Shown: piece by piece, positions 4,551 to 9,962 of the stretch
Position numbering within the stretch: the stretch's first letter is position 1
Layout: each line of letters opens with the position of its first letter
Source: Octopus sinensis
Lineage: Eukaryota
DNA length: 14,501 nucleotides
Assembly: GCF_006345805.1 (NCBI RefSeq)
Contig: NW_021825737.1
Span: 1 to 14,501, forward strand
Direction of reading: 5' to 3'
The notes under the pieces: generated by a model
What the model saw: only the letters and a program-made list of their open reading frames with translations
What the model was told of the DNA's origin: nothing
Database searches by the model: none
Translations under genes and position numbers: made by a program

Positions 4551-5272
4551 TATTATATAAAAGAGATTTTACTGTAATATCCCAGTCGAGGATAATGATT
4601 AGAGACGCATATAGAAGTAGAATCGTCCATCAATTTGGTCAACACTCCTTAACTGCTTTCCTGTGTGTAGGACTTACGTAACTACTATAACCAACAGCAT
4701 CATGTGACGATGTTTTCTAACCAGGGTCACATGGCAATGTCATTTAGAAATAATAACCAATCAGATTGGTCTTTGTTAGGGGGCTCCGTAGACCTCATTG
4801 GCACATTAACCATCAGATTTAAGATTAAATGTTTATACTTATCTACGCTTATTAACGCGACATCTTTTAAACAATAGAATAACGCGAGAACGCATTGAAG
4901 TGGATCAACGGATTTTACCTTTAACTGCGTCCGTTTGATGGAGGAGCGGCGAAATAACATTTCCTTGGATCCGTTTGAATCCTTTGTTCAAGTTTCCTCT
5001 GACAATCCTTAAATTATATTAAAGTTATCGCTTGATTTATTTGGAAAATTGAAGATACATACATACACAAATAAATATATATATATATATATACATACAA
5101 ACAGACACACACATATATGTATGTATAATATATATATATTATATTAATATTGTATAAAGGGCATTATACACATAAATGCCTCACACTAGGAGGGACAAAG
5201 TCATTACTACCAAAAATTATACTAATCAACCAAATGCAGTTTTTCAAAGCAAGACATTTAAAAATGAATTAT

Positions 5273-5328
5273 GTTCTGTATCACCGTGATTTCACATACA
5301 ACTTGCGTCTAATGATCGTCAGCAGAAC
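5273..5328 (-). ncRNA. Type I hammerhead ribozyme motif (copy 1)
   Basis: Reverse complement reads GTTCTG-CTGACGA-stem II-GAAA-TCACGGTGA-TA-CAGAAC. Predicted C17-equivalent base at 5279. Confidence 0.8.
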
Positions 5329-5745
5329 TGATTCTGAATACATCATAAATAAACCAACCTATGTAGCGAAGACGAACAGACAACTGTTCACTCCAGCCAA
5401 GCACATGGAATGTTTATAAATCATATATCCGGTAAATGGCGGGTTTTACGAACTGCATGTCGGGTAATGAAAAGTATTTCGGAATAAGTTTAACAATTAA
5501 GGATAATTCTTAATAAGGGATCTTAACAAGAAATTATCGGGTAGCTAGCGTGAAAACCTCATAAAAGAAAAGAATCCGAAAATAATTTTTTTCTTTTGAA
5601 CAAATTAATTATATCTATATTGTATAAAGGGCATTATTACACATAAATGCCTCACACTAGGAGGGACAAAGTCATTACTACCAAAAATTATACTAATCAT
5701 ACCCAAATGCAGTTTTTCAAAGCAAGACATTTAAAAATGAATTAT

Positions 5746-5801
5746 GTTCTGTATCACCGTGATTTCACATACAACTTGCGTCTAATGATCGTCAGCAGAA
5801 C
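5746..5801 (-). ncRNA. Type I hammerhead ribozyme motif (copy 2)
   Basis: Same motif; cleavage-site base at 5752. Confidence 0.8.
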
Positions 5802-6221
5802 TGATTCTGAATACATCATAAATAAACCAACCCTATGTAGCGAAGACGAACAGACAACTGTTCACTCCAGCCAAGCACATGGAATGTTTATAAATCATAT
5901 ATCCGGTAAATGGCGGGCTTTTTACGAACTGCATGTCGGGTAATGAAAAGTATTTCGGAATAAGTTTAACAATTAAGGATAATCTCTTAATAAGGGATCT
6001 TAACAAGAAATTATCGGGTAGCTAGCGTGAAAACCTCATAAAAGAAAAGAATCCGAAAATAATTTTTTTCTTTTGAACAAATTAATTATATCTATATTGT
6101 ATAAAGGGCATTATTACACATAATGCCTCACACTAGGAGGGACAAAGTCATTACTACCAAAAATTATACTAATCATACCCAAATGCAGTTTTTCAAAGCA
6201 AGACATTTAAAAATGAATTAT

Positions 6222-6277
6222 GTTCTGTATCACCGTGATTTCACATACAACTTGCGTCTAATGATCGTCAGCAGAAC
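6222..6277 (-). ncRNA. Type I hammerhead ribozyme motif (copy 3)
   Basis: Same motif; cleavage-site base at 6228. Confidence 0.8.
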
Positions 6278-6784
6278 TGATTCTGAATACATCATAAATA
6301 AACCAACCCTATGTAGCGAAGACGAACAGACAACTGTTCACTCCAGCCAAGCACATGGAATGTTTAAATCATATATCCGGTAAATGGCGGGCTTTTTACG
6401 AACTGCATGTCGGGTAATGAAAAGTATTTCGGAATAAGTTTAACAATTAAGGATAATCTCTTAATAAGGGATCTTAACAAGAAAATAGGGTAGCTAGCGT
6501 GAAAACCTCATAAAAGAAAAGAATCCGAAAATAATTTTTTTCTTTTGAACAAATTAATTATATCTATATTGTATACCCGATATTTCTTGTTAGACCATTA
6601 TTAGAGATTATCCTTAATTGTTAAAACTTATCCGAAATACTTTTCATTACCCGACATGCAGTTCGTAAAAAGCCCGCCATTTACCGGATATATGATTTAA
6701 AACATTCCATGGCTTGGCTGGAGTGAACAGTTGTCTGTTCGTCTTCGCTACAGGGTTTGTTTATTTATGATGTATTCAGAATCA

Positions 6785-6840
6785 GTTCTGCTGACGATCA
6801 TTAGACGCAAGTTGTATGTGAAATCACGGTGATACAGAAC
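6785..6840 (+). ncRNA. Type I hammerhead ribozyme motif (copy 4)
   Basis: Stem I GTTCTG (6785-6790) pairs with CAGAAC (6835-6840). Core CTGACGA at 6791-6797, 22-nt stem II hairpin, GAAA at 6820-6823, palindromic stem III ATCAC-G-GTGAT, and AUA cleavage triplet ending at 6834. Confidence 0.82.
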
Positions 6841-7255
6841 ATAATTCATTTTTAAATGTCTTGCTTTGAAAAACTGCTTTGGGTATGATTAGTATAATTT
6901 TTGGTAGTAATGACTTTGTCCCTCCTAGTGTGAGGCATTTATGTGTAATAATGCCTTTTACATATAGATATAATTAATTTGTTCAAAAGAAAAAAATTAT
7001 TTTCGGATTCTTTTCTTTTATGAGGTTTTCACGCTAGCTACCCGATAATTTCTTGTTAAGATCCCTTATTAAGAGATTATCCTTAATTGTTAAACTTATT
7101 CCGAAATACTTTTCATTACCCGACATGCAGTTCGTAAAAAGCCGCCATTTACCGGATATATGATTTATAAACATTCCATGTGCTTGGCTGGAGTGAACAG
7201 TTGTCTGTTCGTCTTCGCTACATAGGGTGGTTTATTTATGATGTATTCAGAATCA

Positions 7256-7311
7256 GTTCTGCTGACGATCATTAGACGCAAGTTGTATGTGAAATCACGG
7301 TGATACAGAAC
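7256..7311 (+). ncRNA. Type I hammerhead ribozyme motif (copy 5)
   Basis: Same motif; predicted cleavage after 7305. Confidence 0.82.
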
Positions 7312-7724
7312 ATAATTCATTTTTAAATGTCTGCTTTGAAAAACTGCATTTGGGTATGATTAGTATAATTTTTGGTAGTAATGACTTTGTCCCTCCTAGT
7401 GTGAGGCATTTATGTGTAATAATGCCCTTATACAATAAGATATAATTATTTGTTCAAAAGAAAAAAATTATTTTCGGATTCTTTTTTTATGAGGTTTTCA
7501 CGCTAGCTACCCGATAATTTCTTGTTAAGATCCCTTATTAAGAGATTATCCTTAATTGTTAAACTTATTCCGAAATACTTTTCATTACCCGACATGCAGT
7601 TCGTAAAAAGCCCGCCATTTACCGGATATATGATTTATAACATTCCATGTGCTTGGCTGGAGTGAACAGTTGTCTGTTCGTCTTCGCTACATAGGGTGGT
7701 TTATTTATGATGTATTCAGAATCA

Positions 7725-7780
7725 GTTCTGCTGACGATCATTAGACGCAAGTTGTATGTGAAATCACGGTGATACAGAAC
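7725..7780 (+). ncRNA. Type I hammerhead ribozyme motif (copy 6)
   Basis: Same motif; predicted cleavage after 7774. Confidence 0.82.
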
Positions 7781-8199
7781 ATAATTCATTTTTAAATGTC
7801 TTGCTTTGAAAACTGCATTTGGGTATGATTAGTATAATTTTTGGTAGTAATGACTTTGTCCCTCCTAGTGTGAGGCATTTATGTGTAATAATGCCCTTTA
7901 TACAATATAGATATAATTAATTTGTTCAAAAGAAAAAAATTATTTTCGGATTCTTTTCTTTTATGAGGTTTTCACGCTAGCTACCCGATAATTTCTTGTT
8001 AAGATCCCTTATTAAGAGATTATCCTTATTGTTAAACTTATTCCGAAATACTTTTCATTACCCGACATGCATTCGTAAAAAGCCCGCCATTTACCGGATA
8101 TATGATTTATAAACATTCCATGTGCTTGGCTGGAGTGAACAGTTGTCTGTTCGTCTTCGCTACATAGGGTTGGTTTATTTATGATGGTATTCAGAATCA

Positions 8200-8255
8200 G
8201 TTCTGCTGACGATCATTAGACGCAAGTTGTATGTGAAATCACGGTGATACAGAAC
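8200..8255 (+). ncRNA. Type I hammerhead ribozyme motif (copy 7)
   Basis: Same motif; predicted cleavage after 8249. Confidence 0.82.
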
Positions 8256-8670
8256 ATAATTCTTTTTTAAATGTCTTGCTTTGAAAAACTGCATTTGGGT
8301 ATGATTAGTATATTTTTGGTAGTAATGACTTTGTCCCTCCTAGTGTGAGGCATTTATGTGTAATAATGCCCTTTATACAATATAGATATAATTAATTTGT
8401 TCAAAAGAAAAAAATTATTTTCGGATTCTTTTCTTTTATGAGGTTTTCACGCTAGCTACCCGATAATTCTTGTTAAGATCCCTTATTAAGAGATTATCCT
8501 TAATTGTTAAACTTATTCCGAAATACTTTTCATTACCCGACATGCAGTTCGTAAAAAGCCGCCATTTACCGGATATATGATTATAAACATTCCATGTGCT
8601 TGGCTGGAGTGAACAGTTGTCTGTTCGTCTTCGCTACTAGGTTGGTTTATTTATGATGTATTCAGAATCA

Positions 8671-8725
8671 GTTCTGCTGACGATCATTAGACGCAATTGT
8701 ATGTGAAATCACGGTGATACAGAAC
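8671..8725 (+). ncRNA. Type I hammerhead ribozyme motif (copy 8)
   Basis: Same motif with a 1-nt deletion in stem II; predicted cleavage after 8719. Confidence 0.75.
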
Positions 8726-9143
8726 ATAATTCATTTTTAAATGTCTTGCTTTGAAAAACTGCATTTGGGTATGATTAGTATAATTTTTGGTAGTAATGAC
8801 TTTGTCCCTCCTAGTGTGAGGCATTTATGTGTAATAATGCCCTTTATACAATATAGATATAATTAATTTGTTCAAAAGAAAAAAATTATTTTCGGATTCT
8901 TTTCTTTTATGAGGTTTTCACGCTAGCTACCCGATAATTTCTTGTTAAGATCCCTTATTAAGAGATTATCCTTAATTGTTAAACTTATTCCGAAATACTT
9001 TCATTCCCGACATGCAGTTCGTAAAAAGCCCGCCATTTACCGGATATATGATTTATAAACATTCCATGTGCTTGGCGGAGTGAACAGTTGTCTGTTCGTC
9101 TTCGCTACATAGGGTTGGTTTATTTATGATGTATTCAGAATCA

Positions 9144-9199
9144 GTTCTGCTGACGATCATTAGACGCAAGTTGTATGTGAAATCACGGTGATACAGAAC
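9144..9199 (+). ncRNA. Type I hammerhead ribozyme motif (copy 9)
   Basis: Same motif; predicted cleavage after 9193. Confidence 0.82.
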
Positions 9200-9613
9200 A
9201 TAATTCATTTTTAAATGTCTTGCTTTGAAAAACTGCATTTGGGTATGATTAGTATAATTTTTGGTAGTAATGACTTTGTCCCTCCTAGTGTGAGGCATTT
9301 ATGTGTAATAATGCCCTTTATACAATATAGATATAATTAATTTGTTCAAAAGAAAAAATATTTTCGGATTCTTTTCTTTTATGAGGTTTTCACGCTAGCT
9401 ACCGATAATTTCTTGTTAAGATCCCTTATTAAGAGATTATCCTTATTGTTAAACTTATTCCGAAATACTTTTCATTACCCGACATGCAGTTCGTAAAAAG
9501 CCCGCCATTTACCGGATATATTATTTATAAACATTCATGTGCTTGGCTGGAGTGAACATTTGTCTGTTCGTCTTCGCTACATAGGGTTGGTTATTTATGA
9601 TGTATTCAAATCA

Positions 9614-9671
9614 GTTCTGCTGACGATCATTAGACGCAAGTTTGTATGTGAAAAATCACGGTGATACAGAA
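9614..9671 (+). ncRNA. Type I hammerhead ribozyme motif (copy 10, with indels)
   Basis: Core CTGACGA present, but with extra T in stem II, GAAAAA instead of GAAA, and the last C of stem I missing. Degenerate or a sequencing error. Confidence 0.6.
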
Positions 9672-9925
9672 TAATTCTTTTTAAATGTCTTGCTTTGAAA
9701 AACTGCATTTGGGTATGATTTTAGTAAATTTTTGGTAGTAATGACTTTGTCCCTCCTAGTGTGAGGCATTTATGTGTAATAATGCCCTTTATACAATATA
9801 GATATAATTATTTGTTCAAAAGAAAAAATTATTTTCGGATTCTTTTCTTTTATGAGGTTTTCACGCTAGCTACCGATAATTTCTTGTTAAGATCCCTTAT
9901 TAAGAGATTATCCTTAATGTTAAAC

Positions 9926-9962
<37 letters not shown>

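What the first reader, a model, noticed from the sequence alone, without database searches (positions are those of the whole stretch)
5147..9926. The 477-bp 'satellite' is a tandem array of hammerhead ribozymes: candidate cephalopod retrozyme / circular RNA element
Seen: each of 10 units contains GTTCTG-CTGACGA-(22-nt hairpin)-GAAA-TCACGGTGA-TA-CAGAAC. That gives a perfect 6-bp stem I, the CUGANGA and GAAA cores, stem III and an NUH (AUA) site, all in type I order. Stem I can extend via GAAT/ATTC beyond a 2x3 internal loop. Stem II folds symmetrically with a GCAA loop. Predicted cuts are 469-476 nt apart. Established: metazoan non-LTR retrozymes (described in axolotl, Acropora coral and Mytilus mussel) are non-coding tandem repeats with one type I hammerhead per monomer that release monomers which circularise. 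Inference: this is such an element, a transcript would yield ~477-nt monomers or circRNAs, and the near-identity of units reflects rolling-circle copying of one circle. As far as I recall it is long for this class. I cannot tell whether this family has already been described.
Basis: partly seen in the sequence, partly recalled or inferred. Interest (0 to 1): 0.92.

Follow-up and report, generated by a model that had tools for sequence, protein, structure and literature searches.

The report
Hammerhead-ribozyme tandem repeat (animal retrozyme)
A 476-bp non-coding repeat, present as two back-to-back arrays, carries a complete self-cutting hammerhead RNA motif in each unit and looks like a new example of the "retrozyme" mobile elements already known from mussels, corals and salamanders.

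Summary
The motif is real. A 56-nt type I hammerhead (6-bp stem I, CUGACGA, 22-nt stem II, GAAA, 4-bp stem III, AUA cut site) is letter-perfect in 8 of 10 units. One unit has a 1-nt deletion and the last unit is damaged. None of 400,000 composition-matched random 476-nt circles matched the same descriptor. The monomer folded as a circle is far more stable than shuffles (z -5.4; 14 flank controls -1.3 to +1.1). Rfam Hammerhead_1 reaches only 14.4 bits (gathering 34), and the base of stem II is U.U rather than G-C, which has a precedent in an active axolotl retrozyme ribozyme. The element is 33% GC and non-coding. It sits in a (TA)n microsatellite with both 3' ends facing outward, the tandem/inverted layout typical of Penelope-like retroelements, the proposed mobilisers of animal retrozymes. 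No diverged copies could be found, so covariation, cleavage and circles remain untested. Verdict: probable non-LTR retrozyme, a new member of a known kind. The host is probably an octopus, judged from memory only.

The parts
5071..5144 (.). Imperfect (AT)n microsatellite, left target flank. Its last 16 nt, TATAATATATATATAT (5124-5139), recur at 9930-9945 and are a possible target-site duplication.
5138..6575 (-). Inverted arm: 3.02 units on the minus strand. Read in ribozyme sense it runs from consensus position 126 (at 6575) to position 144 (at 5138). Its 3' end faces the left flank.
5273..5328 (-). Hammerhead copy, exact 56-nt motif. Predicted cut between A at 5279 and C at 5278.
5746..5801 (-). 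Hammerhead copy, exact. Predicted cut between 5752 and 5751.
6222..6277 (-). Hammerhead copy, exact. Predicted cut between 6228 and 6227.
6574..6575 (.). Head-to-head junction of the two 5'-truncated arms (consensus 126 meets consensus 209) with a 2-nt TA overlap. It is not a symmetric fold-back.
6574..9926 (+). Direct arm: 7.04 units on the plus strand, from consensus position 209 to position 266. Its 3' end faces the right flank.
6779..6847 (+). Hammerhead copy with extended stem I (GAAU..AUUC across a CA/AUA internal loop). The core motif is 6785-6840 and the predicted cut is after A6834.
7256..7311 (+). Hammerhead copy, exact. Predicted cut after 7305.
7725..7780 (+). Hammerhead copy, exact. 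Predicted cut after 7774.
8200..8255 (+). Hammerhead copy, exact. Predicted cut after 8249.
8671..8725 (+). Hammerhead copy with a 1-nt deletion next to the stem II loop (21-nt stem II). It still fits the descriptor. Predicted cut after 8719.
9144..9199 (+). Hammerhead copy, exact. Predicted cut after 9193.
9614..9672 (+). Damaged hammerhead copy: GAAAAA in place of GAAA, an extra T in stem II, and a broken 3' strand of stem I. It fails the descriptor. This is either real decay or sequencing error.
9926..9963 (.). (TA)n microsatellite, right target flank. It contains the second copy of the 16-nt string at 9930-9945.
9964..10395 (-). SINE-like repeat whose tail abuts the (TA)n. It is context and not part of the element. 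Strand is assigned from my recollection of the SINE's orientation.
   Evidence: identity as an octopus SINE is from memory only

Best explanation
This is a non-autonomous, non-coding retroelement of the metazoan non-LTR retrozyme kind. Its unit is 476 bp and carries one type I hammerhead ribozyme.

Inferred life cycle:
1. The array is transcribed into a multimeric RNA. The promoter is unknown.
2. Each hammerhead cuts after ...GGUGAUA, before CAGAAC. [quoted passage not shown]
3. A host RtcB-type ligase closes the monomers into highly self-paired circles.
4. A Penelope-like element reverse transcriptase and endonuclease copies a circle (or a multimer) round and round at a nick in a (TA)n microsatellite.

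At this locus both sides of the break appear to have primed cDNA synthesis, as in twin priming. That gave two multi-unit cDNA arms with 3' ends outward and truncated 5' ends joined in the middle.

What is shown: the motif, its statistics, the predicted fold, the array geometry and the flanks. What is inferred from the published biology of the family: transcription, cleavage, circularisation and the identity of the reverse transcriptase.
For: Ribozyme motif:
- The core is complete: C3-U4-G5-A6-C7-G8-A9, G12-A13-A14, A15.1-U16.1, A17. The order is type I. Stem I is 6 perfect bp, extendable by 4 bp. Stem III is 4 bp.
- 0 of 400,000 random circles match the descriptor.
- Rfam Hammerhead_1 is the only ribozyme family hit. 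It aligns stem I and CUGACGA at 14.4 bits, E 0.48 against all 4227 families on 96 nt.
- The three-way-junction fold costs only 1.6 kcal/mol more than the MFE.
- The geometry of 6-bp helix I and 4-position proximal helix II matches the canonical metazoan type I ribozyme.
- U.U at the base of helix II is reported for the self-cleaving axolotl HHR_Amex2.
- The 56-nt motif is among the best-kept 5% of windows in the unit.

Repeat unit:
- It is tandem, 33% GC, with no ORF above 98 aa, no Pfam hit and no tRNA.
- Circular monomer MFE is -120.8 against -90.0 +/- 5.8 kcal/mol for shuffles (z -5.4) on the ribozyme strand, and z -3.3 on the other strand.
- 14 flank control segments give z between -1.3 and +1.1.

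Insertion architecture:
- There are two arms in opposite orientation, with 3' ends outward and 5' ends truncated at different unit positions, joined by a 2-nt overlap.
- No variant is specific to one arm, and stretches of up to 282 nt are 100% complementary between arms.
- (TA)n lies on both sides, with a shared 16-mer.
- Penelope-like elements show exactly this: partial tandems, an adjacent inverted 5'-truncated copy, and a microsatellite or (TA)n insertion bias.
- Retrozymes are proposed to be mobilised by, or derived from, Penelope-like elements.
Against: - The Rfam score is far below the gathering cut-off, and the hit disappears when more sequence is searched.
- The usually conserved G10.1-C11.1 pair is absent.
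- Stem II has three non-pairs out of nine positions, and stem III has low pairing probability (0.05-0.08).
- The isolated 69-nt motif folds no better than shuffles (z +0.56).
- The ten units are effectively one sequence. Differences are mostly private 1-nt indels, 36 of 52 variable columns. There is therefore no covariation evidence.
- No related copy was found in any collection.
- No reverse transcriptase gene is in the window.
- The descriptor was fitted after the fact.
- The inverted junction could be an assembly error.
Confidence: 0.75

Rival explanations
1. This is an ordinary satellite DNA that expanded by unequal crossing-over or replication slippage. The hammerhead-like motif is a chance or long-dead resemblance with no catalytic role.
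For: The Rfam score is below threshold. Stem II is imperfect with U.U at its base and stem III is weak. The motif alone folds no better than shuffles. There is no covariation and no relatives were found.
Against: A motif this complete was never seen in 400,000 random units. Unequal crossing-over cannot homogenise arms of opposite orientation, yet the arms have no arm-specific differences. The strand-biased excess of predicted structure and the retroelement-like insertion geometry go unexplained.
Confidence: 0.1
2. The units are tandemly reiterated terminal repeats (pLTR) of a truncated autonomous Penelope-like element, not an independently propagating retrozyme family.
For: Penelope-like elements carry type I hammerheads in their pLTRs, often with a long helix II and an unpaired base after A9. 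They form tandem/inverted insertions in microsatellites. Xenopus retrozymes are sister to pLTRs.
Against: There is no RT or GIY-YIG coding sequence, and no ORF above 98 aa, in or next to the array. 3 and 7 whole units with no internal region fit a unit-length template. Stem III is a real 4-bp hairpin, unlike the minimal Penelope-type ribozymes. By the 2026 preprint's view, this reading and the best explanation differ only in degree.
Confidence: 0.1
3. The array is real but lies in one orientation. The head-to-head junction at 6574/6575 is a long-read or assembly artefact.
For: Differences between units are dominated by single-base indels, the signature of noisy long reads. Penelope-type tandem/inverted structures are known to trouble assemblies.
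Against: The junction is not a symmetric fold-back. Consensus position 126 meets position 209, an 83-nt offset. The minus arm abuts the (AT)n flank directly, with no plus-strand units to its left. Inverted 5'-truncated copies are expected biology for this kind of element.
Confidence: 0.12

Closest known systems
Metazoan non-LTR retrozymes (Cervera & de la Pena 2020, PMC7229834): Mytilus galloprovincialis 350-390 bp, Acropora millepora 220-240 bp, axolotl 330/350 bp repeats
   Same: Non-coding, low-GC tandem repeats with one type I hammerhead per unit. The monomer RNA is predicted to be highly self-paired. Array sizes range from dimers to large multimers. The axolotl HHR_Amex2 likewise has U.U at the base of helix II.
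   Different: The unit is longer than the 170-400 nt stated in 2020, but within the 51-972 bp range reported in 2026. There is no detectable sequence similarity to the Rfam type I seed beyond the core. Loop 2 is a 14-nt partly paired extension capped by GCAA. The locus has two arms in opposite orientation, which those papers do not mention. Expression and cleavage are untested here.
Hammerheads in the pLTRs of Penelope-like elements (Cervera & de la Pena 2014, PMC4209133; Craig et al. 2021, PMC8557442)
   Same: Type I topology, a long helix II, and an unpaired base straight after A9. The insertions are tandem plus an inverted 5'-truncated copy, with a (TA)n or microsatellite target preference.
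   Different: There is no RT/GIY-YIG ORF. Helix I is a full 6 bp and helix III a 4-bp hairpin, not the minimal form. C-G preceded by U.U replaces the conserved G10.1-C11.1.
Classical ribozyme-bearing satellites: newt satellite 2 (~330 bp), Schistosoma Sm-alpha, Dolichopoda cave-cricket pDo500 (~500 bp)
   Same: Satellite-like repeats whose transcripts are cut to unit length by a type I hammerhead. The families are cited. The ~500-bp size of pDo500 is from my memory.
   Different: These are different hosts and unrelated sequences. The newt ribozyme has a 1-bp helix III and acts as a dimer, whereas here helix III is 4 bp.
Plant LTR retrozymes (Cervera et al. 2016, PMC4918200)
   Same: Non-autonomous retroelements that yield circular RNA through hammerhead cleavage.
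   Different: The plant elements have type III hammerheads inside LTRs, a PBS and PPT, more than 55% GC, 600-1000 nt circles, and are mobilised by Gypsy elements. None of these apply here.

Membership tests
Hammerhead ribozyme, type I | Conserved core boxes CUGANGA and GAAA, with A15.1-U16.1 and a non-G at position 17 | tested here: met
   CUGACGA ... GAAA ... U-A, exact in 8 units and usable in 9
Hammerhead ribozyme, type I | Three helices around the core, with helix I open and helices II and III closed by loops | tested here: met
   Stem I is 6 bp (+4). Stem II has 6 pairs over 9 positions plus a GCAA loop. Stem III is 4 bp plus a CGG loop. The fold scores -9.0 against an MFE of -10.6 kcal/mol.
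Hammerhead ribozyme, type I | G10.1-C11.1 pair at the base of helix II | tested here: not met
   U.U here, followed by C-G. A U.U at this place is reported for the active axolotl HHR_Amex2.
Hammerhead ribozyme, type I | Score at or above the Rfam RF00163 gathering cut-off (34 bits) | tested here: not met
   14.4 bits, E 0.48 on a 96-nt slice. Stems II and III were skipped as local ends. No hit on longer slices.
Hammerhead ribozyme, type I | Compensatory changes in the helices among diverged copies | not testable with these tools
   The units are near-identical. No relatives were found in the protein, viral or metagenome collections.
Hammerhead ribozyme, type I | Site-specific self-cleavage | not testable with these tools
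   This needs in vitro transcription.
Metazoan non-LTR retrozyme | [quoted passage not shown] | tested here: met
   476-bp unit in 3.0 + 7.0 copies.
Metazoan non-LTR retrozyme | A type I hammerhead in every repeat (definition of an 'active' retrozyme) | tested here: inconclusive
   9 of 10 units fit the descriptor. The last unit is damaged, possibly by sequencing error.
Metazoan non-LTR retrozyme | Low GC (<45-50%), non-coding, no LTR/PBS/PPT | tested here: met
   GC is 33.2%. The longest ORF is 98 aa, with no Pfam family and no homologue. PBS and PPT were not searched for specifically.
Metazoan non-LTR retrozyme | Monomer RNA predicted to be stable and highly self-paired | tested here: met
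   68% of bases paired. z is -5.4 on the sense strand and -3.3 on the antisense strand, against -1.3 to +1.1 for 14 controls.
Metazoan non-LTR retrozyme | Expressed as linear and circular unit-length RNA | not testable with these tools
   No transcriptome of the host was reachable.
Metazoan non-LTR retrozyme | Co-occurrence with autonomous Penelope-like elements in the same genome | not testable with these tools
   There is none in the window. If the host is an octopus, recently active Penelope families are reported in O. vulgaris.
Autonomous Penelope-like element | ORF encoding a reverse transcriptase plus a GIY-YIG endonuclease | tested here: not met
   No long ORF in the array, and no Pfam hit for the array ORF or the five flank ORFs tested.

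The most novel reading that the evidence does not exclude
This would be the first retrozyme family described in a cephalopod. Its hammerhead variant (U.U at the base of helix II, with loop 2 extended into a GNRA-capped hairpin) escapes Rfam-based annotation. The locus would also be a preserved footprint of a single integration event: rolling-circle cDNA primed from both sides of a break in a (TA)n microsatellite, giving two head-to-head multi-unit arms. That would be direct structural evidence that animal retrozymes are inserted by the Penelope-like element machinery, which so far rests on co-occurrence and pLTR similarity.
Probability: 0.4. Interest if true: 0.6.

Novelty: new member of a known kind. 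Interest (0 to 1): 0.48.

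Why it matters
Retrozymes are abundant sources of small circular RNAs in animals, and how they move is still argued. The link to Penelope-like elements rests on co-occurrence and sequence similarity.

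A young array with outward-facing 3' ends, a head-to-head joint and (TA)n flanks is what Penelope-type integration would leave behind. If the pattern recurs at other arrays of the family, it gives that hypothesis a testable genomic signature.

The finding would also extend the class to cephalopods if the host is confirmed. In the papers I could search, cephalopod hammerheads appear only as a count of Rfam hits in the giant squid.

Finally, it shows that gathering-score Rfam scans miss real-looking variants.

Tried and rejected
**Searching for relatives to test covariation. All routes failed.**
- The 98-aa antisense ORF had no homologue.
- A 957-aa query made from all six frames of the consensus trimer gave 4439 word candidates, none significant.
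- Exact look-ups of two consensus ORFs found nothing on record.
- The 27-nt motif had no match in IMG/VR viral contigs.
- A core pattern in JGI metagenomes gave one hit, L001. It has no stem I and no tandem repeat, and the contig name suggests an environmental metagenome. With 22 specified bases in a collection that size, I judge it a chance match.

**Rfam.**
- No hit at gathering score.
- With permissive thresholds, the only ribozyme hit was a sub-threshold Hammerhead_1 match on a 96-nt slice.
- The snoR09, miRNA and CRISPR-DR hits are low-score noise or microsatellite matches.

**Other element types.**
- A SINE-like, Pol III-driven element of the Sm-alpha kind was rejected: ARAGORN finds no tRNA-like sequence.
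- A coding element was rejected.
- No second ribozyme was found on the antisense strand.
- The bacterial promoter and terminator scan is uninformative for a eukaryote.

**Host identification.**
- A SINE-derived ORF found only one anonymous 538-bp ENA contig. The octopus assignment therefore stays a recollection.

**Simple inversion of a one-orientation array.** I judge this less likely, because the minus arm abuts the flank directly.

Full report
**What is in the sequence**

Tandem Repeats Finder reports two adjoining arrays: 5138-6575 (period 476, 3.0 copies) and 6574-9926 (period 471, 7.1 copies). AT skew changes sign at about 6575.

The anchor GTTCTGCTGACGA occurs ten times against 0.15 expected. 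Three occurrences are on the minus strand (5316-5328, 5789-5801, 6265-6277) and seven on the plus strand.

Mapping a 476-nt consensus back onto the window gives two arms:
- The minus arm, read in ribozyme sense, runs from consensus position 126 (window 6575) through two full units to position 144 (window 5138).
- The plus arm runs from position 209 (window 6574) through six full units to position 266 (window 9926).

Both 3' ends face outward. The two 5'-truncated ends meet head-to-head with a 2-nt TA overlap.

Stretches of up to 282 nt are 100% complementary between the arms. No variant is specific to one arm.

Differences among units are mostly private single-base indels (36 of 52 variable columns). 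They look like long-read noise or extreme youth. Either way, the ten units amount to one independent sequence.

**The hammerhead motif**

The 56-nt string GTTCTG-CTGACGA-TCATTAGACGCAAGTTGTATGT-GAAA-TCACGGTGA-TA-CAGAAC is exact in 8 units. The unit at 8671 lacks one G beside the stem II loop. The last unit at 9614 has GAAAAA, an extra T and a broken stem I.

Read as RNA, the motif has these parts:
- Every conserved core position: C3 U4 G5 A6 C7 G8 A9, G12 A13 A14, A15.1-U16.1, A17.
- Type I order.
- A perfect 6-bp stem I, which continues as GAAU/AUUC across a CA/AUA internal loop.
- A 4-bp stem III with a CGG loop.
- A stem II with positions U.U, C-G, A-U, U-A, U.U, A.G, G.U, A-U, C-G, capped by GCAA.

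The predicted cut is after ...GGUGAUA. It gives monomers of 469-476 nt in the assembly and 476 nt in the consensus.

**Is it chance?**

I wrote a descriptor with these requirements:
- a stem I of 6 Watson-Crick pairs;
- CUGANGA;
- an 8-30-nt stem II with at least 3 of its 4 basal positions paired;
- GAAA;
- a stem III of at least 3 bp;
- U followed by a non-G.

It finds nine of the ten units and nothing else in the window on either strand.

It matched none of 400,000 random 476-nt circles with the unit's dinucleotide make-up, scanned on both strands. A looser version matched 16. The descriptor was written after seeing the candidate. Even so, the loose rate of 4e-5 per unit makes coincidence inside this particular repeat very unlikely.

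**Weaknesses of the ribozyme call**

- Rfam gives no hit at gathering score.
- On a 96-nt slice, Hammerhead_1 (RF00163) scores 14.4 bits against a cut-off of 34. It aligns only stem I and CUGACGA and skips the long stems II and III.
- The hit vanishes on longer slices.
- The usual G10.1-C11.1 pair is replaced by U.U.
- The isolated motif folds no better than shuffles (z +0.56).
- Stem III has low pairing probability.

Against these points:
- The active three-way fold is within 1.6 kcal/mol of the MFE.
- The canonical metazoan type I ribozyme has a 6-bp helix I and a 4-bp helix II. That matches this motif if the distal part of stem II is read as a structured loop 2.
- A U.U at the base of helix II is described for the self-cleaving axolotl HHR_Amex2.
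- Penelope-type hammerheads commonly have long helices II and an unpaired base after A9.
- The 56-nt motif is among the 5% best-preserved windows of the unit. This is weak evidence.

**The rest of the unit**

- It is 33% GC.
- Its longest ORF is 98 aa. That ORF has no Pfam match and no homologue in 5.8 billion proteins. A six-frame query also found nothing.
- It has no tRNA-like part.

Folded as a circle, the ribozyme strand reaches -120.8 kcal/mol against -90.0 +/- 5.8 for shuffles (z -5.4, 68% of bases paired). The opposite strand gives z -3.3. Fourteen 476-nt control segments from the flanks give z between -1.3 and +1.1.

A stable, highly self-paired monomer is a stated property of retrozyme circles.

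**The insertion site**

An imperfect (AT)n lies to the left (5071-5144) and a (TA)n to the right (9926-9963). The 16-mer TATAATATATATATAT occurs at both borders, at 5124-5139 and 9930-9945. It may be a target-site duplication, but that is ambiguous inside a microsatellite.

Penelope-like elements are described as:
- forming partial tandems;
- often carrying an inverted 5'-truncated copy directly upstream;
- preferring microsatellites, including (TA)n.

That is the geometry seen here. Animal retrozymes have been proposed to be mobilised by Penelope-like elements and to derive from their pLTRs. Neither retrozyme paper mentions inverted arms.

Unequal crossing-over cannot homogenise arms of opposite orientation. 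The identity of the arms therefore argues for one recent event copying one template. It argues against slow satellite growth.

A simple inversion of a one-orientation array is less likely, because the minus arm abuts the flank directly. A fold-back artefact is also unlikely, because the joint is offset by 83 nt of unit coordinate.

**Most likely mechanism**

Confidence is about 0.75. Each step is marked as shown or inferred.
1. Transcription into multimers (inferred; promoter unknown).
2. Hammerhead cleavage after A17, possibly helped by pairing between neighbouring copies. The stem III hairpin AUCACGGUGAU can form a 10-bp intermolecular duplex with one G.G mismatch (read directly from the sequence; function inferred).
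3. [quoted passage not shown]
4. Target-primed, multi-round reverse transcription at a nicked (TA)n by a Penelope-like RT and endonuclease, with priming from both sides of the break and joining by microhomology (inferred from the geometry and the literature).

**Comparison with what is known**

The element meets the sequence-level definition of a metazoan non-LTR retrozyme:
- a tandem unit of a few hundred bp;
- a type I hammerhead in each unit (9 of 10);
- low GC;
- non-coding;
- a self-paired monomer.

Expression, cleavage and co-resident Penelope-like elements could not be tested.

At 476 bp it is longer than the 170-400 nt quoted in 2020. It is well inside the 51-972 bp reported in 2026. 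From memory, it is similar to the ~500-bp cave-cricket pDo500 satellite.

It is not an autonomous Penelope-like element, since it has no RT or endonuclease ORF. It is not a plant-type LTR retrozyme either.

**Host**

The repeats at 9964-10395, 10902-11297 and 717-1126 look to me like the abundant octopus SINE. That is recollection, and no tool confirmed it.

In the searchable literature I found no description of a retrozyme or ribozyme-bearing satellite in any cephalopod. The nearest items are:
- a count of 235 Rfam Hammerhead_1 hits in the giant squid genome;
- a report of recently active Penelope families in Octopus vulgaris, which would supply a plausible mobiliser.

**Verdict**

This is a probable new member of a known kind. 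The twin-arm, (TA)n-flanked architecture adds modest extra interest as a footprint of Penelope-type integration. Interest is 0.48.

Noticed in passing
window 9964-10395, 10902-11297, 717-1126: Three copies of one SINE-like repeat. The second is 82% identical to the first. The third is 67% identical and in the opposite orientation. The first abuts the (TA)n that received the array. From memory they resemble the abundant octopus SINE. The only database relative was an anonymous 538-bp ENA metagenome contig (L002, 86% identical to 10883-11192).
   Followed up: partly
window 5075-5125 and 10395-10450: A ~50-nt stretch, (TA)n-CAyACAAACAGACACAyACATATATG, is about 92% identical on the far left of the array and just beyond the head of the first SINE. 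The two copies bracket [array + (TA)n + SINE]. It may be an unusually long target-site duplication of the SINE. In that case the array inserted later, next to the SINE tail.
   Followed up: partly
window 2484-3031: A long (GGAC)n microsatellite of 137 copies at 87% matches. It raises local GC to 64% and creates several spurious 180-320-aa ORFs on both strands.
   Followed up: no
window 5138-9926: Differences between units are mostly private 1-nt indels, many in homopolymer runs, and they are densest in the last unit (9194-9926). This suggests an unpolished long-read assembly rather than real divergence.
   Followed up: partly
window 5054-5139: Sub-threshold Rfam 'miRNA' hits (mir-297, mir-3149, mir-1277). 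They are matches to the TA/CA microsatellite and not genes.
   Followed up: yes
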